Positions 1-39,261 of a stretch of 64,000 nucleotides of DNA are shown in pieces (positions within the stretch are counted from its first letter, which is position 1; each line of letters starts with the position of its first letter). The DNA is from Guillardia theta CCMP2712 (lineage: Eukaryota > Protista > Cryptophyta). The notes under the pieces were generated by a model. That model made no database searches and was not told the origin of the DNA. It worked only from the letters and a program-made list of their open reading frames with translations. Where the stretch lies: NCBI RefSeq assembly GCF_000315625.1, contig NW_005434659.1:435714-499713 (forward strand), read 5' to 3'. Made by a program: the position numbers and the translations under genes.

Positions 1-269
1 CGTTGGGGGGGGGGGGAGGGGAGGAGGAGGAGGAGGATTGTTTTAAGCAGCAACTACACGATGTTTGGATGGGCGACTCGTCAGCCGTAGAGAAAGACGT
101 AATATGAAGTAGAGGACAAGACAAGGAGGGAGAGTACGAGGAGAATTGGGATGTCAGACAGGATGGTCAGAGATGGGAAAGGCATGACAGGAGTTTCAGG
201 CCATTGCGCGGGTGGGAGGGCCCCTGTACGGTGGCTTGCTGTTTGCTCACGTGGGGACGAGGCTGGGAT

Positions 270-1627
270 TTAACGCCAGGCCGGCTGTTGAGTCAATCCA
301 CAATTTCTTCGTGCTTGCGATGCTGCTGTATGCATACCCGATCTTACACAGGGCCAACAAGCAGAAGCAGGCCTAATCTGATCTGATAAGCCTGCAAGGA
401 AACCTCTTCTTCTCGCTCCCCCTTCTGCTCCCCTCGCTCTTTTCAAGTACACAACCCCCACTCCTCAGCACCTCCCTCCTCCTTCTCCTACCTCCGACTT
501 AGTTTGAAACGTTTACAACATGCATTCTTTAGTACAGTCTCCTCCTAGTTCACATCGAGTAAGTCTGGCTCATGCTCCCGGCCCCTCCCTCCCTCATCCT
601 CATCAGCGACGGTCTGATCGACTTCTCCTTGCTCAACCAGTGATCTGCCTTCCGTCGTCAGTTCCTCTGCCGATGCCTCTTTGTGTCGGACCCACCTGCT
701 CCACCTCCTTGCTCCATCGACTGATCGTTGGGGCTGTTGGTGTGTAGCAGACTGTGTGAATCTGGCGGAGAGCAAGACAAAGGTTCAGCCTACCTCAGCG
801 GGGGCACGCAAGTGACGTGGGCTTCATGCTTGACGCTTGTTATGCTGTTAAGCTCGCAGTCAGCGCAATCTCAGCACAGGGGAACGAGCAAGTTCAACCT
901 GACATCTGTCAAGAACTTTCCCGTCCCTCTTGACAAGGGCAGGGTGCTGTCAGACTCCCTAGAGAACTTGTCTTGCTGGCTCCATATCATCCATTTGATA
1001 TACTGCACAACCTGCGGCATACTTGGCGGACGCACAGGGCGGCGCCTTCATTCTACCTTGCTCTGGTTGGCTACTGTCGCTCTCTGCAAAGGTGTATCCC
1101 CCTTGAGATCCTTGGCTTGCAAGTCCGCGCCGAGGTGAACTAGCATCTGCAACTTCAACCTCACAACGCCTCCTCTCCCGCACAACACCGAGTTGCCTGC
1201 AGGTTCTGAAGTTTTCCCGATGAAGCCGCCAAGTGGCATCTGATGCAGCACATCAATTGAACCTTCTCCTTCTCTTCACCCTCCTCTCCGCCCTCACGCT
1301 GTTCTGCCGGCAGCGTCTCGGCGCTCCAGGTCATGTCCAGCTTCGTACAGCATGTTGATGTCAGAAGGATAGCCTATCACCTGCATCCAAGACAGCAATG
1401 AGCATGCAACTCCCCGCACAGCAGTGAGATGCTCTCACAGCCGCAGCATGCAGCGGGGAGCCGAAGGAAGCAATCAACTTCTCGGTCCCTGAAGGATGCT
1501 TCGACCTATCCGAGTTGCCGTGCGAGCCTGATCTGCAATGATCCAGCATCTCCGTCCTCACGCACAGCGACCCGAGCCCCGAGCTCCCCTCTTGGTCGTA
1601 TCTAGACTTTGATTCTTGTCCTCCCAT
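270..1627 (-). CDS. Ankyrin-repeat protein, spliced; possible N-myristoylation. 3' end approximate.
   Basis: ORF pieces contain ankyrin motifs GSPLHAAA (1361..1657) and LVHLGADLQAKDLKGDTPLQRA (1048..1251). ATG at 1627 gives MGGQESK (MGxxxS). Confidence 0.6.
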
Positions 1628-7600: not shown

Positions 7601-8142
7601 TCGGCGACCTGGTTAGCAGCATGCAAGCAAGATCCGGGATCCTCCCTCCTCACGAGGTCGTCGTCGAGCATCGCCCGCAGCGCGCGCGCGGCCCCGGTCA
7701 TATTGCCCACCTTCCTGTAGCACTCAGCATGCGCTACGTGTCTGGCCAGCCGAGCATCCATCGCCCCAGCATGGCAGGAAGCAGCTCGGCCGAGCTGATA
7801 GCAGGGGAGGTAACCATCCTGTGCTGGTCCCTTGCCCGCTGTCCTCTCTGCCATGCCAGCCACCATCTCCCACAGCCCAGGATCGCAATCCTCCCTCCAC
7901 TCCGCCGCCGCCCAGTAGCATCGATACGCCCCTCCTTCGTCTCCCTGCACTCGCAGCATCTCGGCTGTCTGCAATGCTGAGCCTGCGTCGCCTTTCTTGG
8001 CCAGCGGGCATGAAGGATGTGACAGAGCCGCCGGCATGGCGAAAGCAATGAAGGGAACGAAGAGCGTCATTGCTATGGGCAGGCGCTTCTTTGACTTCTT
8101 CCTCCCTCCCGCCATGGGAGAGAGCGGTAGAGGAGGAGCCAA
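4640..8142 (-). CDS. TPR-containing GT41 glycosyltransferase (OGT/SEC-like), multi-exon
   Basis: TPRs (RNFGSALVKLGRFEEALPHLLRA). C-catalytic motifs FGAFNDHYKIDP, DVFLDTHLYNGHSTTSDMLW and VPVVTLPGEKMAAR. A last intron at ~4714-4761 gives ...FNLVVASE* at 4640. Confidence 0.85.
6905..7100. repeat. Imperfect (CTG)n / CTGATA trinucleotide tract inside an intron (~6878-7139) of the GT41 gene
   Basis: Direct repeat sequence. It is flanked by GT (gag|gtgaggg) and AG on the minus strand and produces spurious poly-S/L/A ORFs. Confidence 0.9.
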
Positions 8143-28624: not shown

Positions 28625-29914
28625 CCTGTAATTATAAGGGTGAGAAACTTTATCGCAACTCAAACATTCAGTAGCAAGAAGCTTAAACCCATGAATTTGA
28701 TTCTCTGCAATGCTCGTGGAAACTATTTCTTCCAAGGAAATCACAGCTAAAAGTGCGTGCAAATTGACATCAATGATTGAATGGATATGGAATCTCACAA
28801 ACTAACATCCTTAGCGTGTCGCAGCTGAAGAAAGGCGAACTATTCAAGTATCAAGCTGCGAACAAGCAAATTTTGATGTGTGGTTTGTGAACGAACAGTT
28901 TTCAGACGAAATTGAAAACAAGAAAGATTGCATGAGCAGGTAGGCATGGGAAAAACGATCCTAAAATAGGTGAGATCGAGGAAGAGCACAAAAACAAGGG
29001 AGCGCTGTCCACGCTTACAAAAGGCAAAGGATCGTTGTGAAATGGTTCAAGATGGTCATAACTTCGATGACAACGTAGTGCTAGATCTGTGCAATCACAA
29101 GATAAGAGGAGAGAGAGAGAGGGACCAGGAGGATCAGAGCAGGCAGAGCAGGAGGAGCAGGTGGGGCAGGCAGAGCAGGAGGAGCAGGAGGGGCAGGAGG
29201 CAGGAGGAGCCATTGCAAGAAGAAGCGCCATGTCAGAGGCTGCCGTCACGTGAATGGCCTGCATCACCCCACCCCTGTCTTTGTCATCTCAATGGATTGC
29301 CACCCTACCATATTTTCCCCTACCCTATGTTTTTGTACCCCTATGTTTTCAGTACCCCAATTTAGCTATTTGAAATAGGGGTGATGGTCTTTCACAAACC
29401 CTACCATCGATCCCATACAACACCTCTACCCACCTCGATTGGATGGAACCCCAATTTTTATCCCTACCCCTGCCATGCTTTTCTATTACCCCGTCCTTCT
29501 CCCATCCCTGATCATCCCTGCAAATAAGTACCCCACCCTCTTTCTCCGATGCTCAGAACCCCACCATCCCTACCTCATGACCCAATTTACCACCCCTGCC
29601 ACGGGACCTTACCTCTGAAGGCCCCACCCCTAGAACAGGAAAAGTACCCCTACCTTCCTCTGACTGTAGGTACCTTTGGTTTATTTTTGACAGAGCTACG
29701 TTAGAGTTCTGTACACCTGCCCCTCACCCCTGGTACCCCCTACCCCCAATTACAAGCTCAAACTACCCCCTGCATACCATTTGCTTAGATGATCTAGGAC
29801 CTCATCCCCAAGCAGCCCGGGCCCGGTCTGATAGGCTGCACTCATGGCTGCACTACTGAAGGCTGTCTGAAAGCCCGGGCAATTTTAAGATTTGACCAGA
29901 GATTGACCACAATA

Positions 29915-31397
29915 ATGCTCAGGCGTGCGGTGGCGACGGCGGCGGCGGCCATGGCGGCGGCATGTGGCTCTTTCAGCGAGGGTTCAGACCATGCTGTGCG
30001 TGTGGGAGGAGGAAGAGCCCTAGCCCATGGGATTCTCTTTGCGTCATCCAACGGTGCTGGAGCAAGGGGGATCAGAACGATGTCTGGACTAGACCACGAG
30101 GAGCAATGGGCTCTTGGGGGGTTTGACGCGCTAGGACATGATACTGGGCTGGAGGATGTGTGTCCTGACGTCCATGAGATGTTCGTCTACTTCGATCAGA
30201 CATACTTCAACGGGATGCTGCAGAGAAATGCTGTGATGGTCGAGTGGAGTCGGCGGATGACCCTGTGCGCTGGACAGTGCTCCTACCGGGGAAGAGAATC
30301 GCTCTGTAGGATAGCTCTGTCAGAGCCTCTTCTCAAGTACAGGACGAGCAAAGAAGTGAAAGAAACACTCTTGCACGAGATGATCCATGCATGGCAGTTC
30401 GTTACCGACGGAAACCGCGACAGGGAGGACCATGGCCCGAAGTTTCTCGGGAAGATGGAAGAGATCAACGGAGGGGCGAAGCGCGACATGTATGCAAATG
30501 ACGTCTCATCATGATGTTGATGCTGGAGGATATGACGCTCTTGCTCCCTCAGCTACAGGCCGCAGGCTGGATACGCAGTCGCTGTCTACCACACCTTCCA
30601 CCAGGAGGTGAACTTTCACCGGCAGGTACGACTGCGCATGCGGTACCTGGGAGGTTCGACCTGATGGTGGGGGCTGGGCAGCACTGGTGGCAATGCTTCT
30701 CGTGCGGCAAGCAGGTGAGAAGGTCGATGAATCGACCGCCGTCGGAGAAGGACTGCAGGTGCCCTCATGAATCTTGGCCTCCCCGGCTCTGAACGTGGTT
30801 GTCGACGCAAGGCTGTACCGGAAGAACAAGAAGACGGTCAGTTGCTCTGATCCGAGGTGACGTGCGATCTCTGTTCCATGTTACTCCACTGGGATGACGG
30901 CAAGGGAGGCAGATGCCTGTGGCACGTGCACGAGGCTACTTGCGGACAGCCTTTCACCAAGACCAGGAGCCCGTCACCGCCGAAGAAGAAGAACTGCAGG
31001 TTCTTGGCGCTCCACTGCCATGCCTGTGAGTGAGCGCGTGCTGGTGCAGGGGAAAGGATGCGAGAAGGATTGCGAAGAGCGAGAGCTCGACATGTAGCAG
31101 AGAGTCGACAAGACAGTCCGACCAGCAGCCATCAGTGGCAAACTCAGGCTGGCAAGAGGGTGATGGTGGTGGTGATGGTGAGAATGATCTGAGGCCGGGA
31201 GGATGAAGACTGATTTCTTTGGAGCAGAGACAACGGTAGAGAGCGTGGAGGTTGCATGCCCTGTATGCACCCGAAGGTTTCCTGATGAGGTCAGGCCGAC
31301 AGATGAATGGGGGATGGGGACTGAACAATACATTCAGAGAGATGTTATGGCGCATATCGACATGTGTTTAGCTAGACAAAAATTGTGTTCAAGATGA
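29915..31397 (+). CDS. SPRTN: SprT-like DNA-protein crosslink protease (Spartan) with C-terminal UBZ zinc finger; multi-exon
   Basis: VEWSRRMTLCAG, IALSEPLLK, TLLHEMIHA (HExxH), HGPKF, VYHTFHQEV, HWWQC, RRSMNRPPS. C-terminal CPVC...MAHIDMCL. Start may instead be at 30080. Confidence 0.88.
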
Positions 31398-31467: not shown

Positions 31468-33906
31468 CTACAGTCTTGATCGTTTCGATGTATCATAGTA
31501 AACTGGCCCTTCTTTGAGCAGAAAGACCTGAAGTTGTGAAGGTCAACTTTCACAAGGATTGCACTAGAGATATCAAGACTCTACCTTCATGCCATGAGAC
31601 CAAATGGTGAAGTAAACATCCCAAATGATACTCCTGCAAGCCGTCAGCGAGCAGGACTGTGTCGACCAGCCCGCCCTACCTGACGTCGAAGTCGAAGAAG
31701 TACATATCCTCCCAAGACATGGCCTTCAGGACCGTGTACATGTTCTCCGACTCGAAAAACCACTGCCAACAAGCAGATCAGCATCCCCTCGTGCTCCTCC
31801 CGGCTCTGCCGACCTCGTTCATGGTGAAGTACTTGAGCACACCAAGGGCGTCCTTGATCTTCTTCATCGTCCTCGCCGCATCTGCCTTGCCCCCCTGCCA
31901 CGTCCCATCCTCACCGCTGCTCTCTGGCAGTTTCCACAGACCTTGAGCCTTGAAACAACGTCATGCGCCACCGCTGGGAGCTGATGCAGCAACAAGTCCA
32001 GCAGCCGGTAGACCGTCGAGCTCCTGGTCCACCTACATCTCCTTTAGCGACAGCAGAGGAGGAGGTGGTGGATTGGGAGGGGAAGGAACTGGGGGCAGGA
32101 TGGTGGAGGCGAGGGGGAAGGCTGTGGGAGACCTGAAGAAGATGGGTCCTCGGCTCTTGTCAGTCGGGTGTCTGTGGTAGTAGCCGGGCATGGCTTCGAG
32201 CATGAACTTCCAAGGGATGGGATTCCTTCCTGAGCTGCCGATGTTGACTATCTTGAGAGAAGATCGGCCTCCAGTGAAAGTCAGTGATTGTGAACGAGAC
32301 AATTCTAGAGAAAGAAATTCTAGAGTTGGGGAGGGGGAGGGAGGAATGCAAGGAGGAGGAGGAGGAAACGGAGAAGGTAAAAGAATCAAAGATGGAATTT
32401 TGACACACCCAAACTTCCTTCCTTCCCAGACGAGACAAACCATGCACAAGAAAGCATGCAGTTGACGACAAAATCGACAGGAATGAAGTCCACAACAAAG
32501 TCATCTCGGCCAGGAGCTACGTGTAGGACCCCAGCTGGAGGGAGCTATGGTCAGTGTCCGGCAGCGTCACAAGGCAACTTTACAACCTGCAACTGCCAAG
32601 ACCAGCCCCGTGGGCCCCACAAGAGTATCAATCCACCCTGACACTCCTGTCAGCCCTCCCTCCCTCCCTCTCCCTCCTCCCTCCTCCCTTCCCCTCCTCC
32701 CTCCCCAACATCCTCCCCCTTCCAACTCCCTCCTCTCATCGCGCCGTGGCTCTGCACCTGGCTCAGGCTCCTTGTACGCACAGGTGACGATGGTCGGCCT
32801 TACGATCAGGTAGGGGAGGCTGATCATTAGAGTCACCGAGTGAGCGGCAGGAGCAGGAAAAGAGCGTCGGGTCTCACCTCTCGCCAAGATCACGTAGGAC
32901 CAGCTCTCCGATACACCTGTGCGAGTTTCCTCACCGTCAGCGCTGCTGGCTCGCCTTGCTCAAGGAGGTCGTACTTGGTCAGGCAGTAGGAGTTGGGCCA
33001 GTGCCCGGAGGATTCGAGGATTTCCTCCGTCATCGCGCTGACTTCCTCTCTCGACATCTTGTCCACCCGCGACTTGAGCTGCCAGTAATCCGCAGGTACC
33101 GACCTGCCCGAACAGTTGACATCCAGCAAACACAACACAACACAAAGTAAGGACAAAGCAAAGGACGGAGTAAAGGCAACGTAAGGACAAAGTAAGGACA
33201 AAGTAAAGCTGGGACTACTCCCACTCTTCCCACCTGAACTCTTCCGGTATGACGTGGTTGGCTCTGACCGGTGCATTGACGTAGGCAGTGGAGACGTGGA
33301 TCAGGGCCTCTAGCTTCTTGATGCTGCCATGAAGGAGCTCTCACCAGCCTCCTCCTCCTCCTCCCCTGTTCTTCTCACCTCTTGCAGATATCAACGAGGT
33401 GGATCATACTGTCCACGTTGATCTTGAAGGCAGTCTTGAGGTGCTCGTTGAAGTTGATGGTAGCAGCGCAATGGAACACATAGTTGACATGCTCCTTCAC
33501 CAGCATGAAGTCCTCCTCCGACATGCCAAACCTTGGCAGGCAGACGTCGCCCTGCACGGCCCTGCACTTGCTCAGAGATTCTGGCCTGACACGACGGAGC
33601 TGGTTGAAACAAGAGGAAGGAAAAATCTCCTCCTGCAAACGTCGCTGGGCGGCGCTGCCGTTCTTGGTGTTTGACCGCAGCAACACGTACACCGTCTCTA
33701 CCTCTGGGCAGCATCGGAGGATCTTCTCGAGAAGAGCCTGACCCCCACCAATCATTGACCGTCACCATGCCTCTCCTCCTTGTTACCTTGCCAAGAAATC
33801 CCGAGCATCCAGTGATGAGGACGCTGCTGCCTGAGAACTGCGACCTGACCCTGGACCCATGGCTGACATCTCCTCTGCCTTTCTCCTTCATGTCTGACTG
33901 TGTCAT
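31468..33906 (-). CDS. FAR: Fatty acyl-CoA reductase (alcohol-forming; NAD_binding_4 + Sterile domains); multi-exon; ends in SRL
   Basis: VLITGCSGFLGK, ALLEKILRCCP, VFHCAATINF, HVSTAY, WPNSYCLTK (YxxxK), IVRPTIVT, GWIDTL. Last exons FDVR|SIIWDVYFTIWSHGMK|VFLLKEGPVYYDTSKRSRL*. Confidence 0.9.
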
Positions 33907-35228
33907 CGACGACAGGATCGGTTCCACATACGCCTTTTGCTCTGCACGCCCCTTGTTCTGACTCCCCCCTCCACTCTCTCCCCTCCTGCCCCTACTCCTC
34001 CTGCCTCTCCTCCTCCCTCCCTGCCTTCCGCTGCCACCCCTTCCTCTTCCTCAGGTATCAGTCACTCCTCGACGACCTGCCCATCACAGCGGCGATCTGC
34101 GAGCATCCCGAGAAAATCAGGATTCTCGACTCCCAGCCTCACAGATAGATCAGGCGCAAGGATGCGCCGCACCAGGCGCTGCACCTATCCGAGCATGTCC
34201 TGACTGACATCGAGGGGCTCGAGGAATGTGCTGACCTTCTTGTATGGCGTGACAAGCGACATCACCGGGAGGTAGAGGGAGGGGAACACGCGCTATGGTA
34301 GCGAAAGCACGGATGAGGAAGCGCTTGATGTTAGGGAGGACACGATGGCGATGTCGGATAGCAGCAGCAGCAGCCTCCACTGCGTCAAGAGAGGGAGCGG
34401 GTGTTTGGGGGGGGGGGGGGGGGGGGGAACAAGTGAAGATCCACGTTGCACTTTTGATTCGTACACGTTTGCAGTCTCGCACTCAAGATAAAGTCTATGT
34501 CTTGCCGTACCTGATATGAAATATGATGTGGATGCAACAGTTGTCTTTCATCAGATTAGCGCTGATCTTTTAGCGCTATTCTGATGAAGCGCCCAGCGGT
34601 CCCAGTCTTCCCGCAATCGACTTAGTCTTTCTGCCATTCGTCCATCATTGATATCGTTTACAAACCTTTTCTTGTTGGCTGGCTGAAATGAGAGGAACCC
34701 TAAGGTGTCCATGCTAGTGTAAAAAGAATGATTCGCTTGAGGTTCTGGATGACAGACGTTCATGTACAGAATCTGCTCATGTTTGATTGCATGCTGATCG
34801 TAATGGATGCCCTGGAAATCTTCAGTCGTATGAATAAAACCTGTTGCTCGCTTACATATTACTTGGTTTGCCGATGTGATTTGCAGAAAACAAGTGTATT
34901 CAAAATGATTCTTCAAGTCTACAACCATTCAGGGCTTCTGCCATGTGGAACAATGATGTTTGAGCCTGTCACACCGTCGAGCATGCAAATACACACATTT
35001 ACATCAGGTCTCTCAGATTATCATATCAACATTCAGCCCGCTATCGTAAGGACATTAGGGTTATCAGCATTCTTTAATGGGCTTATCAAAAATGCACTCT
35101 TTTCAACGACATCAATACGTGCATTCTGTAAAGATCTAGTCCTTAGCTTGTCGAAAGCGATTGCCTACACGTCAAATCAAATCTCATCTAGCGAGTACTG
35201 CTGCTTTACGTCTCCTTACCTTTGTCCG

Positions 35229-36806
35229 TCATATGTCACCAGACTGGTCAAACTCAGCGTCATTGTTGTCATGACCAAGTTTAGGCATGTTAAACACAAA
35301 GCGATCCGCTCCGCCCGCGCTGCTGATTTCAAGCCTGCTCAAGAATTCTGCGAGGTCCAGATAGATCCTGCGGTAGTGAGCCACGGACTCTCGTTGCCGA
35401 GCATCTGTCGTCCTGCCCATTTCGGTCAACATCCTTGCCAACTCTATCTCAGTGAGAAAGGCCCAAGGCTTTCCACATTTCTCTGATGTATGCTCCCACC
35501 CTGAGGTGGACTTCCTGATGCAGGCGGCAACGTAGGGTTGTGGGTACATGTTTGATCTCGCTGGATGTGTAAATTTGTCTGCTGGCACTGCAAATCCTCG
35601 AGATGACAACTCTCGACCCAGCTCGTTGGCAAAGAACATAACCTGAGCATGCAACAACCTCGCCAAGTGACCCTCAGGGCTCTCTTGCTGCTGCAGACCA
35701 CCACTCTGATTACTTACAGGCGTAAGAATGCTGGTCGGATTGGCTGTATAACCTGAGATGATTGCCCCAGCATACTGTGGCTTCATGTCTGGAAGAGGCC
35801 AATCGGCTTTGGGCATTCCACCTACCTTCCTCCAACCCCTACTTGCCATGCGGATCCCATTGCCTGGATTGCCTCCTCCATAAAACTCACGGTACCACTT
35901 GCCGAAATCTCTTCTCAGCCTTTCGAGAGCTCTTTGAGAGAACTGATCCGACAAGCAAGGGGTCAAGAAATAGTCAGAATGCATCAGAAGAAGCTTGTTG
36001 GTCGTATTGATTGCTGGCGCAAGGTCCAGCACCACATATGTAGCTCCAACTGAGTACGCCGCCCTCCAGATCTGATGAAAGAGAATTCCAGGACAATTAT
36101 GCAGTTCTGCAGCCTCTTGACCCATATTGATCTGTTGGAATTTTTGAGTAAGAAAAGCATCAATGCGTTCAAACTCTTCTCCTGCAGCTACAAAAAACAG
36201 GCGCTTGTTGTTCCTAGTTCCTGGACCATCTGGAACCTCGAAAGCATGTGGCACGCAAAGCTCAGCAGTGCCGTTTGTATCTCGGAATTTCCTCGATGCT
36301 GCTTCAAGCGAGATGGAAGAACCCGTGCGGAGGCCCCGTGGCAGCCTTGATGATAAGTAAGCTAAGTAATCGCCTGCTATCTCGTCATGCTGATCTGTGT
36401 AAACGGCCTTGCGAAATGCCAGTTGCAAGAGATTCTGCTGCCCGTCGCAATCGACCATGAGAACCTTGTTGTGTGAATTGCTTGCAAGCGCAAAGGCCAA
36501 GGAATGTGTTGTGGTGGTTTTAGCGACACCTCCCTTGTTGTTCCAGACCACGATGATCTTGGGACGATAGCTTTGAAGGCCTGCCAACTGGGTTGGGCCG
36601 CCTTCCTCCGGTACAAAATGATCCATATGAGTGACTGCGATTTCATGTTTCCTCGGCCGGTTGGTCACAGGTAGTTCCGCAGCTCGCTGATCGTTGGCAC
36701 CAGCTCGTCGTTCCTCACAATCTCGATATTCCGTGAGCGGAAACTCGATCTTCCGCGGTCCAGCGTTAACACGCTGGTAGATGTCATTCTCTGGGACAGG
36801 AGGCAT
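35229..36806 (-). CDS. ParA/Soj/MinD-superfamily ATPase (bacterial-type), intronless, ~525 aa
   Basis: Deviant Walker A IVVWNNKGGVAKTTT, A' motif KVLMVDCDGQQNL, Walker B YVVLDLAP, then SDYFLTPC..DQFS. One open frame; first ATG at 36806. Confidence 0.85.
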   Translation of the reverse strand: MPPVPENDIYQRVNAGPRKIEFPLTEYRDCEERRAGANDQRAAELPVTNRPRKHEIAVTHMDHFVPEEGGPTQLAGLQSYRPKIIVVWNNKGGVAKTTTTHSLAFALASNSHNKVLMVDCDGQQNLLQLAFRKAVYTDQHDEIAGDYLAYLSSRLPRGLRTGSSISLEAASRKFRDTNGTAELCVPHAFEVPDGPGTRNNKRLFFVAAGEEFERIDAFLTQKFQQINMGQEAAELHNCPGILFHQIWRAAYSVGATYVVLDLAPAINTTNKLLLMHSDYFLTPCLSDQFSQRALERLRRDFGKWYREFYGGGNPGNGIRMASRGWRKVGGMPKADWPLPDMKPQYAGAIISGYTANPTSILTPVSNQSGGLQQQESPEGHLARLLHAQVMFFANELGRELSSRGFAVPADKFTHPARSNMYPQPYVAACIRKSTSGWEHTSEKCGKPWAFLTEIELARMLTEMGRTTDARQRESVAHYRRIYLDLAEFLSRLEISSAGGADRFVFNMPKLGHDNNDAEFDQSGDI

Positions 36807-37302
36807 GTCTTCTAACGATGGATCAGGCTTCAAGCTTTCACTACAGTCGACGGTCGTGAGTCGTGCACCCTTGGAGGTGCTGAGACGGCGGGACTCCGGG
36901 GAGCGAAGCCGCGGTACTGCCTAGACTTAAGCAGCGGCTTGACAACGAACCCCTACTGTACTGTGAGTCTAAAACTCGAAGTAGTATACTATGACGGTCC
37001 CATTATAGTTCTCACTGTGACTGGTAACTCAACCTGATTTTAATTATCACAGTACAAGTAGTACCATCAAACATTTTTGATTTCAATACTGTGGGAGTAT
37101 TTTTAAAAAAACCTTGCTGGGAACAGCTATGAAATAAGGTCGCTGGGAACGGTCGTAGTATTGAGCTTTGAGTAAAGTCGGTCAAAAAAAAATTGAGTGA
37201 CTCCAACGCAACGGAAAATGTCAATTAAAAGCAGAGTCAGGGGCCGCTGGCGGGCCTCTCCCGTCCGAGTCACCCGGACCCTGGGCCCGGCTCGGGGTCC
37301 GG

Positions 37303-37330: not shown

Positions 37331-39261
37331 ATGAGGGTCGTGGAGGACATGGCATGGGAGGTATGCAGGACGGTGGGGGAGCTGCCGGAGAGCGCGTGCT
37401 CGAAGCTCTACGAGAACCAGTGGGCCTGCGTCTCTATGATGAGGCTGATGCCTCCTCTCGGCAGACAGCTGCTCATGCGCCTCGTGCATCTCGGGCAAGA
37501 GCGGGTGGAGCTGCTGCGATGGGTAGACGAGGGAGAGGTTCAGCGACAGAGGTTGGAGGAGGTTGTGAGGAAAATGGAAGAAGTTAAGATTCTGTACTTG
37601 GACGAAGATGTGAAAGAATCAGATGGTGTTTCGGTCAGGATCAATCCAACGTTCAGCGAGAGGATCCTCCAGTTCCTTTTGCAGAGGGATACGTCTCCAT
37701 GGAGCAAGGGAAGGATCATGGGAGATAGTCCGGACACGACGGCTGAGGAGCTCCAACAATGGGCCCAAAATCGATGGGAGAGTATCCTACACTACATGGT
37801 GAGTCCGGGACTAGATCCCATGAAACGGCCCGAGCCAGGATGGAAGCCAACAAAGTGGGTGAGGGGGATTCTGGTAGGGGAGGACAAGAACGGAAATAGC
37901 TTCATGATGTCTCTGCAAAACCTTGCGCCGAAAATCACTGCCTTTGGGTTTCAATTCTTACTTCGTCCTCTTCGCAATCAAATCCTTCAGATGCTGATGC
38001 ACGTGCTCACCAAGAAAGGGTCCGAGAACAAGGACCTTCAGGACAGTCTCTCGTGCATTTTTCAGCTCAGCTTCTGCACTCTTGGGGCGGGATATCGTTT
38101 GGACCTTCTGTCTCGTAGCAACCAGGAGCTGATAACTTCTTTACATGACCTGGGAGCTGTATACTTCAAGCCGAACGATAGACAATACTTCTTCCCAACA
38201 CCACTGATCGTCAATCTTTGCACAGAAAGTGAAGTTCCATCAGGGCCCTCGACAGACGCAGGTCTCCAAAGAGTCATACATGACGTGTGAATTTATCGTG
38301 ACTTTGTACGAAGGTGTGGCAGATGAATTCAGCGCAGAGCCTGCAGCTGGGGTGGGGATGGGAAGATGCATAATAGTAGAAACAAATTATCGGATTTACG
38401 CGTATACAACCTCAGCACTACAAGAACAGGTACTTTCGCTTCCTCTCTCTTCTTCTCTCATTCTCATTGCTGACAATTTGTTGGTCAGATCTTGAGGTTG
38501 TTTACTCGGCCGATCTACAAATTCCCGCACATGATTATTGCAGTCATCACCCGGGAGAGTATCAGAAATGCTCTGGTAAGGGGGATTACTGCATCGCAGG
38601 TGCGTCAAATCAAAGAAAGCTTTGTTCTCACTGGATACGTTTGGCTCACTTTATCACCAGATCATCGAATATCTTAGAATGCATGCTCATCCTCAGGTGT
38701 GAATAATCACCTTGTCGTGTTCTGAAAAATGACGTCAACGACAGTGCCTTGAAAACTGGCCTATTGTTCCAGAAGTTGTAACAGATCAGGTGAGGCAGAT
38801 ACAGCTGCAAATGTTGAATGTTGTGCAAGCTGACGCAATCAATAGATCTGTTTTTGGGAACAAGAAAGATGCCGAATTCGTGCGGAACCAGCGGTTCTTG
38901 TCTTGTTCCTGCTTTCTGGTGCCTTTTGACTCGAGCAATGTGTAGGTTGCGTATCATAATTTTTTCAGTGGGGAGGCTCATAGAGCGGTGTGCTGCTTTG
39001 TCTTCTCTTTTTCGCGTCCCATGACATGGCTTGTCTCGTACCAACAGTGCGAGAAAGAAGCGCGCAGGTTGAAATTCAACGACAAGGGACCTGGCGAAGT
39101 TGCCAAGCGCGAAGCTTGCTTGTACAGCGACACCAGCGAACAGCTACTTGTAATCTTTCAACTTGTTGAACATGCGCTTGTTTCTCACTGCTGAGTAGGT
39201 GGTTCCTGAAGCTGCTGATCCCCTCATTCGCAAATTTATTGAAACGTCAATAAACGAGTGA
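37331..39261 (+). CDS. TFB2: TFIIH subunit p52 (Tfb2/GTF2H4); multi-exon
   Basis: KLYENQWAC, RWESILHYMV, ITAFGFQFLL, IIVETNYRIYAYT, ITRESIRNALVRGITASQ|IIEYLRMHAHPQ and PEVVTDQ. Confidence 0.92.

What the first reader, a model, noticed from the sequence alone, without database searches (positions are those of the whole stretch)
35229..36806. Intronless prokaryote-type ParA/Soj-like ATPase in an intron-rich algal nuclear chromosome
Seen: a single 1.6-kb open frame with an intact deviant Walker A (NNKGGVAKTTT), DCDGQQNL and Walker B (LDLAP). It has a ~80-aa N-terminal extension, no evident organelle presequence and a long C-terminal region. It sits between two heavily spliced genes (FAR, Tfb2) and looks less GC-rich than them. 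Established: ParA/Soj ATPases are bacterial, plasmid or phage proteins; the eukaryotic relatives (plastid MinD, Get3, Nbp35/Cfd1) carry extra motifs or presequences not seen here. Inference: a horizontally acquired stand-alone ParA-family gene of bacterial or giant-virus origin, repurposed for an unknown positioning, DNA-binding or defence role. This is the best candidate for an undescribed system in the window.
Basis: partly seen in the sequence, partly recalled or inferred. Interest (0 to 1): 0.72.

Follow-up and report, generated by a model that had tools for sequence, protein, structure and literature searches.

The report
Stand-alone ParA ATPase gene in cryptophyte
A cryptophyte alga carries a real, intact, intronless and probably weakly transcribed nuclear gene for a bacterial-type ParA ATPase; it belongs to a small algal branch of a ParA lineage otherwise found in bacterial prophages and giant-virus-like DNA, a transfer to eukaryotes that a 2026 preprint has already described in outline, and its function is untested.

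Summary
Window 35229-36806 (minus strand) is one 525-codon frame, identical to the public gene model. It has intact ParA motifs and lies between spliced FAR and Tfb2 genes.

One correction: there is no separate C-terminal domain. The ParA fold runs from residue ~82 to ~495 (Z 24 to PDB 3pg5 and to Soj) and is lengthened by insertions. Only residues 1-81 and the last ~30 lie outside the fold.

The gene is not a contaminant, and it is not MinD, Nbp35 or Get3. It sits in a strongly supported clade of about ten to thirteen sequences that share its N-terminal and C-terminal motifs; one is from a haptophyte. The genome holds three more intronless genes of this lineage.

Rooted on Soj, a 38-row group holding every known eukaryotic row is sister, with moderate support, to a group holding stand-alone prophage ParAs. 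That 38-row group also contains a gene on a Mimiviridae-like contig.

This matches the "Euk1/Euk2 sister to prophage/transposon ParA" picture of Li, Burroughs and Aravind (bioRxiv, October 2026). The finding is therefore a new member of a known kind.

The likely mechanism is an ATP-sandwich dimer switch. A role against viruses or mobile DNA is a guess.

The parts
35229..36806 (-). Single-exon coding sequence, 525 aa plus stop, of a stand-alone ParA-clade ATPase
   Evidence: ORF list. Identical to public protein P0161. Pfam AAA_31 and CbiA. No splice joints in the parts of the frame that RNA contigs cover.
36564..36806 (-). Clade-specific N-terminal extension, residues 1-81. It carries a conserved I..RV..GPR.FE motif (about residues 10-22) and a second conserved patch (about 56-62). 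Residues 46-72 are modelled as disordered.
   Evidence: Alignment A3. pLDDT is 90-93 for residues 11-30 and under 50 for residues 46-72. The extension is absent from Soj and from prophage-type ParAs.
35322..36563 (-). ParA/Soj fold, residues 82-495. Relative to Soj it has insertions at about 140-161, 175-199, 304-335, 358-372, 379-404 and 455-481.
   Evidence: VIA-align: 3pg5_C Z 24.1 (290 aligned, model 82..493); H. pylori Soj 6iub Z 23.8 (261 aligned, model 80..492). ESM Atlas: bacterial 369-aa ParA, TM 0.87. Insertion map.
36510..36542 (-). Deviant Walker A, NNKGGVAKTTT (residues 89-99), with signature Lys91 and P-loop Lys96
   Evidence: Translation. Nearly invariant in the clade. Residues 90-94 meet across the predicted dimer axis.
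36429..36452 (-). Sensor / Walker A' motif, DCDGQQNL (residues 119-126). D119, D121, Q123 and Q124 are invariant in the clade.
   Evidence: The motif DxDxQ is the PriB1 mark named in the preprint.
36015..36035 (-). Walker B, VVLDLAP (residues 258-264), with D261 invariant
35232..35321 (-). C-terminal tail, residues 496-525. It holds a conserved F.FN motif (F503, F505, N506) and then a disordered acidic end.
   Evidence: Alignments A1 and A3. pLDDT under 50 for residues 509-525.
36807..37094 (-). Likely 5' untranslated region. It lies in a ~525-bp divergent intergenic region shared with Tfb2 (ATG at 37331 on the plus strand).
   Evidence: Contig of run X1 covers 36739-37094 without joints. X1 shows spliced flanking genes, so it holds RNA.
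35087..35228 (-). Likely 3' untranslated region
   Evidence: Contig of run X2 covers 35087-35310 across the stop codon.

Best explanation
This is a functional nuclear gene of the cryptophyte. It encodes a stand-alone ATPase of the ParA clade. It descends from the 'long ParA' lineage found as solitary genes in bacterial prophages and mobile elements (the lineage of PDB 3pg5 / DIP2308), not from chromosomal Soj, MinD, Nbp35 or Get3.

It belongs to a small algal subfamily (cryptophyte-like sequences, a haptophyte and environmental sequences). This subfamily added an ~80-residue N-terminal extension and a few extra loops.

Shown here: the gene is intact, intronless in the covered parts, probably transcribed at a low level, and shows a modest signal of purifying selection.

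Inferred: ATP binding brings two subunits together in the canonical Walker-A 'sandwich' dimer, and hydrolysis resets it. The dimer would then bind a surface or partner (DNA or a protein) through the lineage-specific insertions.

My best guess for the biological role, as the 2026 preprint proposes for eukaryotic stand-alone ParAs, is interference with invading or selfish DNA such as giant viruses or mobile elements, rather than housekeeping segregation. That last step is speculation.
For: Identity:
- AAA_31 at 1.6e-17 and CbiA at 1.3e-10.
- phrog_164 'ParA-like partition protein' at 3e-22.
- AF2 model with pLDDT 84.8 and pTM 0.88.
- Z 24.1 to 3pg5 and 23.8 to Soj across residues 80-495.

Catalytic motifs are intact and invariant in 14 relatives.

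Homodimer prediction: ipSAE 0.42 against a best control of 0.01. That mark was reached by 21 of 30 proteins solved as pairs of one chain and by 0 of 23 solved as single chains. The runs agree in at least 93% of contacts and the partner pLDDT is at least 77. The interface (residues 90-94, 122-125, 263-268, 288-296) is the canonical ParA one.

A real host gene:
- Identical to the public 525-aa model on a 1.05-Mb scaffold.
- A DNA contig covers 34677-37191 at the same depth as the flanks, and RNA contigs cover parts of the ORF at depth 3-5 against 9-16 for the neighbours.
- dN/dS is 0.30 against a 96.6%-identical environmental copy (9 synonymous and 9 non-synonymous changes, binomial P 0.013).

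Ancestry:
- 22 hits below 1e-30, with full-length relatives that include Pavlovales KAJ1618247.1.
- In the Soj-rooted tree the window clade has SH-aLRT 100. A 38-row group holding all known eukaryotic rows (support 89) is sister to the group of 19 rows that holds all eight prophage rows (support 90).
- Prophage copies are solitary and sit next to repressor or HicB genes, with no ParB.
- The PriB1/ConB1 marks (N before KGG, V in Walker A, Q two residues after DxD) are all present.
- The preprint describes Euk1/Euk2 clades as sister to prophage/transposon ParAs.
Against: - No biochemical or localisation data exist, and no partner protein has been identified.
- The dimer pass may reflect the model's memory of solved ParA dimers, as itself warns.
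- Expression evidence rests on contigs of runs whose RNA nature I infer from spliced flanks. The raw RNA run laid only 4 reads on the stretch (about 6 in 100 of the run was read), so it says nothing.
- dN/dS rests on 18 substitutions.
- Most of the 38 rows in the eukaryote-holding group have no organism label, so 'eukaryotic assemblage' is only partly shown.
- Key tree nodes have SH-aLRT 86-90 from a quick search. The careful search did not finish.
- Nothing in the window links the gene to viruses or mobile DNA, and there are no flanking repeats.
Confidence: 0.6

Rival explanations
1. The gene reached the alga through giant viruses (Nucleocytoviricota), or is exchanged with them, rather than coming straight from bacteria. 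It may serve or counter viral DNA handling. This rival concerns the route and overlaps the best explanation.
For: - P0058, in a 97-98% supported clade with the Guillardia paralog L002 and its Hanusia ortholog, lies on a 165-kb, 26.5% GC, ORFan-dense contig with FNIP and ankyrin genes.
- On that contig AAAATTGA occurs 19 times against 7.6 expected (0 of 200 shuffles reach 19). It sits about 40-60 nt upstream of most genes, including the ParA gene. From my own knowledge this is the Mimiviridae early-promoter motif.
- P0035 and P0104, also inside the 38-row eukaryote-holding group, lie on ORFan-dense contigs. One carries Ran_BP1. A neighbour of the other resembles Nucleocytoviricota clusters, weakly.
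- The ParA gene's third-position GC is lower than that of host genes.
- All four genes of this lineage in the genome lack introns.
Against: - No viral member was found inside the window gene's own 10-13-row clade.
- The IMG/VR scan with the clade profile found nothing.
- No viral genes or repeats flank the gene.
- No capsid or other hallmark gene was seen on any of the virus-like contigs.
- The direction of transfer, virus to host or host to virus, cannot be told.
Confidence: 0.3
2. It is a housekeeping positioning ATPase for a cellular cargo of the alga, for example an organelle genome, the nucleomorph or a cytoplasmic body, working as bacterial ParA/McdA/MinD systems do.
For: - The fold and motifs are those of cargo-positioning ParAs, including McdA and Soj at Z 22-24.
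- There is a modest signal of purifying selection.
- The N- and C-terminal motifs are conserved across the clade.
Against: - There is no signal peptide. From general knowledge, cryptophyte plastid or periplastid targeting needs one.
- A haptophyte, which has no nucleomorph, has the family.
- No Hanusia ortholog of this gene turned up, although the paralog's ortholog did. That source is a protein set in which a weakly expressed gene could be missing.
- Transcript depth is low.
- The nearest prokaryotic relatives are solitary prophage genes, not par operons.
Confidence: 0.12
3. It is a neutral, decaying relic of a transfer with no present function.
For: - Low transcript depth.
- Third-position composition unlike the neighbours.
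- Patchy distribution.
Against: - A 525-codon frame is intact with every catalytic residue kept.
- dN/dS is 0.30, P 0.013.
- Relatives at 30-50% identity keep the full length and the terminal motifs.
Confidence: 0.06
4. It is bacterial contamination or a misassembly in the nuclear scaffold.
For: The gene is prokaryote-like and intronless. No single independent contig spans from the ParA ORF into an exon of FAR or Tfb2.
Against: - DNA contigs tile the region with 3-5-bp breaks at equal depth, 4.6 against 4.9-6.1.
- RNA contigs cover parts of the ORF and its 5' leader.
- The closest relatives include eukaryotes, and members of its clade sit on contigs that look eukaryotic (for example next to split SMC_hinge fragments), not bacterial.
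- A 96.6%-identical copy exists in an independent metagenome.
- Three intronless paralogs lie on other scaffolds.
Confidence: 0.02

Closest known systems
Eukaryotic stand-alone ParA clades 'Euk1/Euk2' of the ConB1 conflict branch (Li, Burroughs and Aravind, bioRxiv 10.64898/2026.10.19.760177)
   Same: - A stand-alone ParA in a photosynthetic eukaryote with a secondary plastid.
- The PriB1/ConB1 sequence marks are present.
- The eukaryote-holding group is sister to prophage-borne solitary ParAs in my tree.
- A horizontal-transfer origin is inferred.
   Different: - I could not match this gene to their clades, because no accession list or supplement is held.
- Their text names metazoans and plastid-bearing eukaryotes but not cryptophytes, haptophytes or giant viruses.
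- The N-terminal GPR.FE extension and the giant-virus-like relatives are not mentioned there.
Prophage/transposon stand-alone ParAs (the preprint's 'STP' lineages; PHROG phrog_164); 340-390 aa
   Same: - The same long ParA fold with most of the same insertions (175-191, 304-317, 379-404, 455-481).
- A near-identical Walker A context, N[HN]KGGV[SA]KTTT.
- No ParB partner.
   Different: - Only about 25% identity.
- They lack the 80-residue N-terminal extension, several loops (318-332, 358-374) and the C-terminal tail.
- They are encoded next to phage repressor or antitoxin genes.
PDB 3pg5, DIP2308 of Corynebacterium diphtheriae (uncharacterised ParA-like protein)
   Same: It is the best solved match by sequence (1.2e-09) and by structure (Z 24.1, 290 residues aligned).
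   Different: - 18% identity.
- 361 aa, without the N-terminal extension.
- Its function is also unknown.
Chromosomal Soj/ParA of ParABS systems
   Same: - The same core fold (Z about 22-24).
- The deviant Walker A with the signature lysine.
- The predicted sandwich dimer.
   Different: - A long branch separates the two in the tree.
- This protein has about 150 extra residues of insertions plus terminal extensions.
- No ParB/parS partner is known.
- The NCBIfam ParA_partition score is 45.5 against a cut-off of 180.
Eukaryotic SIMIBI relatives: plastid MinD, Nbp35/Cfd1/Mrp (PF10609), Get3/ArsA
   Same: The same P-loop class. The genome also holds such genes: loci with a [CG]KGGVGK[ST] Walker A on contigs C3, C120 and C71.
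   Different: All these models score below their cut-offs here: minD_bact 26.9 against 212.9, PF10609 21.7 against 27.1, ArsA_ATPase 17 against 24.3.

Membership tests
ParA/MinD clade of SIMIBI P-loop NTPases | Deviant Walker A, KGGxxK[ST], with the extra signature lysine | tested here: met
   NNKGGVAKT, with K91 and K96. Nearly invariant in 14 relatives.
ParA/MinD clade of SIMIBI P-loop NTPases | DxD sensor motif after strand 2, and a hydrophobic-stretch-plus-Asp Walker B | tested here: met
   D119-C-D121 and VVLD261.
ParA/MinD clade of SIMIBI P-loop NTPases | The ParA fold | tested here: met
   Model pLDDT 84.8. Z 21-24 to more than 15 solved ParA/Soj/MinD/McdA entries over residues 80-495.
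ParA/MinD clade of SIMIBI P-loop NTPases | ATP-dependent sandwich homodimer | tested here: inconclusive
   Prediction only: ipSAE 0.42 against a best control of 0.01, with the canonical interface. The pass may come from memory of solved dimers. No biochemistry.
PriB1 / ConB1 branch as defined in bioRxiv 10.64898/2026.10.19.760177 | Asn at the N-terminal-most Walker A position, Gln two positions after DxD (PriB1), and a conserved Val inside Walker A (ConB1) | tested here: met
   N89/N90 before KGG, V94, and D119-x-D121-x-Q123. These marks are subtle, and the Val is also common in Soj.
Euk1/Euk2 stand-alone eukaryotic ParA clades (same preprint) | Stand-alone, in a eukaryote, and sister to prophage/transposon (STP) ParA lineages | tested here: met
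   Only ParA-family Pfam matches, one fold plus short extensions. In the Soj-rooted tree the eukaryote-holding group is sister to the group holding the prophage rows, SH-aLRT 86-90.
Euk1/Euk2 stand-alone eukaryotic ParA clades (same preprint) | Grouping with the authors' own Euk1 or Euk2 sequences | not testable with these tools
   No supplement or accession list is held. No bivalve or rotifer sequence could be identified among my hits.
Chromosomal/plasmid ParABS partition ATPase | Family-level score, and a cognate ParB or centromere-binding partner | tested here: not met
   ParA_partition 45.5 against 180, PrgP 28.5 against 400, RepA 22.7 against 348. Prophage relatives have no ParB next to them. 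I did not search the alga for a partner.
MinD | Family-level score | tested here: not met
   TIGR01968 26.9 against 212.9, and PRK10818 18.1 against 508. The C-terminus is acidic and disordered.
Nbp35/Cfd1/Mrp and Get3/ArsA | Family-level score | tested here: not met
   PF10609 21.7 against 27.1, ArsA_ATPase 17 against 24.3, GET3 subfamily 14.9 against 135.

The most novel reading that the evidence does not exclude
This ParA lineage is shared between algae and giant viruses. A Mimiviridae-like contig carries a member behind an early-promoter motif, in the same clade as a Guillardia paralog. The intronless nuclear copies, this gene included, would then be captured viral genes or host countermeasures that act on viral or mobile DNA in the cytoplasm or nucleus. 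That would be a eukaryotic ParA-based conflict system. The clade-specific N-terminal GPR.FE peptide might act as a built-in regulator of the ATPase.
Probability: 0.2. Interest if true: 0.7.

Novelty: new member of a known kind. Interest (0 to 1): 0.4.

Why it matters
ParA ATPases are the classic bacterial DNA- and cargo-positioning motors, and eukaryotes were long thought to keep only distant cousins (MinD, Nbp35, Get3). This gene shows that true ParA-clade proteins of a prophage-type lineage are kept intact in algal nuclei. It also gives a concrete, well-modelled and probably transcribed example on which the proposal of a eukaryotic ParA-based defence against selfish DNA can be tested.

The link to giant-virus-like contigs is not in the preprint. 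If it holds, it would point to viruses as the vehicle or the target.

The general phenomenon is already in the literature, and nothing here shows a function.

Tried and rejected
- Defence-system models (PADLOC) gave only P-loop-level hits to PDC-M28B, E 4e-4, which is not informative.
- The IMG/VR scan with the clade's own profile found no viral relative. An exact-match search for the Mimiviridae-like contig in IMG/VR found nothing.
- The genome-contig scan returned only 2 weak bacterial loci, because the pattern used was clade-specific.
- Two further word-index protein searches did not help with organism names. One was swamped by canonical Soj, though it supplied outgroup sequences. The other gave 3 hits.
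- The raw RNA-seq run X10 laid only 4 reads on the stretch, with about 6 in 100 of the run read, so it gives no expression level.
- There are no terminal or inverted repeats around the gene, so nothing marks it as a transposon cargo.
- The TnpB/Fanzor-like ORF beside paralog L002 looked like a partner. It is a multi-copy element that ends about 40 bp before the paralog's ATG, while the paralog itself is single-copy. It is an insertion, not a unit.
- I tried to map the Soj DNA-binding arginine onto this protein through the alignment. My script's motif was absent from the outgroup Soj, so nothing was mapped. DNA binding therefore remains untested.
- The careful (bootstrap) tree search did not finish in two runs, so only SH-aLRT values from the quick search are reported.
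- I considered nucleomorph or plastid targeting and rejected it, because there is no signal peptide and a haptophyte has the family.
Full report
**1. The observation**

The window has an open frame at 35229..36833 on the minus strand. From the first ATG, at 36806, it encodes 525 aa. This is letter-for-letter the public protein model P0161, which sits on a 1,047,173-bp contig.

Pfam gives AAA_31 at 1.6e-17 and CbiA at 1.3e-10. PHROGs gives 'ParA-like partition protein' at 3e-22.

The flanking genes are as stated:
- Tfb2 (PF03849, 1e-49) starts at 37331 on the plus strand.
- A FAR-type NAD_binding_4 exon (1e-31) lies at 33375-33755 on the minus strand.

The genome is 87 Mb in 669 contigs. That fits the 80%-identical Hanusia phi ortholog of a paralog.

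**2. Is it a real host gene?**

Contigs of runs X1 and X2 skip short GT..AG (and CT..AC) introns in both neighbours, so those runs hold RNA.
- In X1 the ParA frame is covered in patches, for example 35500-35915 and 36739-37094, at depth 3-5 against 9-16 for the neighbours. No joint falls inside the covered parts.
- X2 covers the stop codon and about 140 nt beyond it.
- Run X4 is unspliced DNA. One contig spans 34677-37191 at depth 4.64, the same as the flanks (4.9-6.1). The adjoining contigs abut within 3-5 bp.
- No single independent contig reaches an exon of a neighbour, so linkage still rests on the assembly plus equal depth.

An independent metagenome contig (L099) is 96.6% identical over 746 nt. 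It shows 9 synonymous and 9 non-synonymous changes in 233 codons, giving dN/dS 0.30 (binomial P 0.013).

Third-position GC is 0.51, against 0.62-0.74 in three neighbouring genes. No repeats bracket the gene. The N-terminus has no hydrophobic signal peptide.

**3. Anatomy**

An AlphaFold2 model built on a 55-sequence alignment has pLDDT 84.8 and pTM 0.88.

The second-look structural alignment puts the ParA fold over residues ~80-495:

| Match | Z | Residues aligned | Model range |
|---|---|---|---|
| 3pg5_C | 24.1 | 290 | 82..493 |
| H. pylori Soj 6iub | 23.8 | 261 | 80..492 |
| McdA (6nop), P1 ParA (3ez2), V. cholerae ParA2 (7npf, 7npe) | about 22-23 | 256-290 | - |
| pNOB8 ParA (5k5z), E. coli MinD (3q9l, 3r9j) | 21-21.5 | 239-289 | - |

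The best ESM Atlas match is a 369-aa bacterial ParA cluster, TM 0.87 by that row, 358 residues aligned.

So the 'long C-terminal region' is the second half of the ParA fold, lengthened by insertions. An alignment map shows:
- Absent from Soj: residues 1-81, 140-161, 175-199, 304-335, 358-372, 379-404, 455-481 and 501-525.
- Absent from the prophage-type long ParAs: only residues 1-80, a few loops (136-143, 154-161, 192-198, 318-332, 358-374) and 496-525.

The N-terminal extension carries a conserved I..RV..GPR.FE motif that is modelled with pLDDT 90-93.

A two-copy prediction with ATP passed the tool's mark. ipSAE was 0.42 against a best control of 0.01. That mark was reached by 21 of 30 proteins solved as pairs of one chain and by 0 of 23 solved as single chains. 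The runs agreed in at least 93% of contacts, and the partner pLDDT was at least 77. Contacts fall at residues 90-94, 122-125, 263-268 and 288-296, which is the canonical sandwich dimer. As the tool warns, this may reflect memory of solved ParA dimers.

**4. Relatives**

An exhaustive profile search found 5709 proteins at E up to 0.001 but only 22 below 1e-30.

The full-length members (P0010, P0012-P0017 and others) share both terminal motifs. One is a hypothetical protein of the haptophyte Pavlovales sp. CCMP2436, KAJ1618247.1.

The two closest, P0001 (49% identity) and P0002 (44%), come from a metagenome scaffold and from an assembly of run ERR1719409. From my own knowledge, not checked here, that run is a Tara Oceans metatranscriptome.

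Clade members on longer contigs sit in what look like eukaryotic contexts, for example next to split SMC_hinge fragments. There too the gene is a single open frame.

The genome holds three more intronless genes of this lineage:
- L002 on C26, 503 aa.
- L003 on C25, 541 aa, on a very long branch.
- A fused double ParA on C8, 978 aa.

Three further AAA_31 loci have a [CG]KGGVGK[ST] Walker A that looks Mrp- or Get3-like. I did not analyse them further.

**5. Phylogeny**

In a 98-row tree, all six rows known to be eukaryotic fall in one 58-row group (SH-aLRT 95) that contains no prophage row. Ten of the thirteen prophage rows fall in a neighbouring 30-row group.

In a tree rooted with four canonical Soj proteins:
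- The whole long-ParA family is one clade (support 100) on a very long branch.
- A 19-row group (support 90) holds all eight prophage rows.
- A 38-row group (support 89) holds all six known eukaryotic rows.
- These two groups are sisters (support 86).
- The window's clade of 10 has support 100 and a stem of 1.07 changes per column.

These are quick-search SH-aLRT values. The careful search did not finish. Most rows are unlabelled environmental proteins.

The IMG/VR prophage copies have a Walker A of N[HN]KGGVSKTTT, very like the window's. They are solitary, next to CI-like repressors, a HicB-like gene or unknown genes, with no ParB.

**6. Giant-virus-like relatives**

P0058 groups (support 97-98) with the Guillardia paralog L002 and its Hanusia ortholog. 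It lies on a 165-kb contig of 26.5% GC, packed with ORFan genes plus FNIP and ankyrin genes.

On the 18 kb held from that contig, AAAATTGA occurs 19 times against 7.6 expected (0 of 200 shuffles reach 19). It sits roughly 40-60 nt upstream of most gene starts on the coding strand, including the ParA gene (motif at 7949, ATG at 8001). From my own knowledge this is the Mimiviridae early-promoter motif.

P0035 and P0104, also inside the 38-row group, lie on ORFan-dense contigs. One has a Ran_BP1 gene. A neighbour of the other resembles Nucleocytoviricota clusters only weakly.

No viral member was found inside the window gene's own clade, and no capsid or other hallmark gene was seen on these contigs. 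The viral link is therefore a lead for the lineage, not a result for this gene.

**7. What is known**

Li, Burroughs and Aravind (bioRxiv 10.64898/2026.10.19.760177, 22 October 2026) describe ParA 'conflict' branches. Within the branch they call ConB1:
- Three Standalone-Transposon-Prophage (STP) lineages are sister to two eukaryotic clades of stand-alone ParAs, Euk1 and Euk2.
- They are inferred to have been acquired twice by horizontal transfer.
- The authors speculate that they defend genomes against selfish elements.

The marks they give for PriB1 (Asn at the start of Walker A, Gln two positions after DxD) and for ConB1 (Val in Walker A) are all present here.

Their text does not mention cryptophytes, haptophytes, algae by name or giant viruses. 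No supplement is held, so I could not check whether this gene is in their set.

No paper in the library mentions DIP2308. Only one paper holds both 'ParA-like' and 'giant virus', and it is about Asgard archaea genomes.

**8. Verdict**

The gene is a horizontally derived stand-alone ParA, with both bacterial mobile-element and giant-virus connections in its wider lineage.
- It is not recent, not unique to this alga and not an undescribed kind.
- Mechanism: an ATP-driven dimer switch is well supported by inference. The cargo or target is unknown. A role in conflict with viruses or mobile DNA is my best guess, at roughly one in three.
- No spliced model had to be joined, because the gene is intronless.

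Noticed in passing
L002:1-1297 (G000:C26:55851-57147): A TnpB/Fanzor-like ORF of 365 aa gives a weak Pfam Cas12f1-like_TNB hit (1e-4, below the cut-off). It belongs to a ~1.3-kb element with at least 9 copies at 99-100% identity across the genome. That suggests recent activity. This copy ends about 40 bp upstream of the ATG of the ParA paralog, which is itself single-copy.
   Followed up: partly
L016:1-17956 (JGI 3300035703 Ga0310140_0000185, a 165-kb contig): A 26.5% GC, ORFan-dense contig with FNIP and ankyrin genes. AAAATTGA occurs 19 times against 7.6 expected and lies about 40-60 nt upstream of most genes, which is Mimiviridae-like. The contig encodes a 651-aa ParA-like protein (P0058) related to a Guillardia/Hanusia paralog.
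   Followed up: partly
L102 (G000:C8:584000-589500): A 978-aa intronless frame holds two ParA domains in tandem (Walker A MHKGGVYKS and NYKGGVGKT; sensors DADGQCN and DGDGQCN). By BLAST its best hits are P0154, of unresolved placement, and rows (P0129, P0096, P0068) that sit with the prophage-type group in the trees.
   Followed up: partly
window 34433-34949: This stretch, between the FAR exons and the ParA 3' end, is covered by contigs of runs X1 and X2 at depth 8-16, higher than ParA itself. The only sizeable ORF (34551-34928, minus strand, 125 aa) has no Pfam match. It could be a FAR 5' exon or leader, or a separate non-coding transcript.
   Followed up: no
window 29903-30514 (+): An ORF with a SprT-like metalloprotease domain (PF10263, 1.3e-28).
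   Followed up: no
L007:7179-13339 and L008 (bacterial MAG GCA_004196295.1): A bacterial 1112-aa double-ParA protein (P0024) lies directly downstream of a 933-939-aa protein with no Pfam domain. The pair is conserved in three contigs and may be a two-gene system.
   Followed up: no
L017:754-10226: A 490-aa ParA-like gene (P0076) lies on a 24-kb ORFan-rich contig that also carries a gene with a weak Cas12f1-like_TNB (TnpB-like) hit, about 7 kb away.
   Followed up: no
L003:1360-2985 (G000:C25): A 541-aa intronless ParA-like paralog with Walker A NNKGGVLKT. It has a very long branch (2.34) and large charged insertions, so its placement in the tree is unreliable.
   Followed up: no
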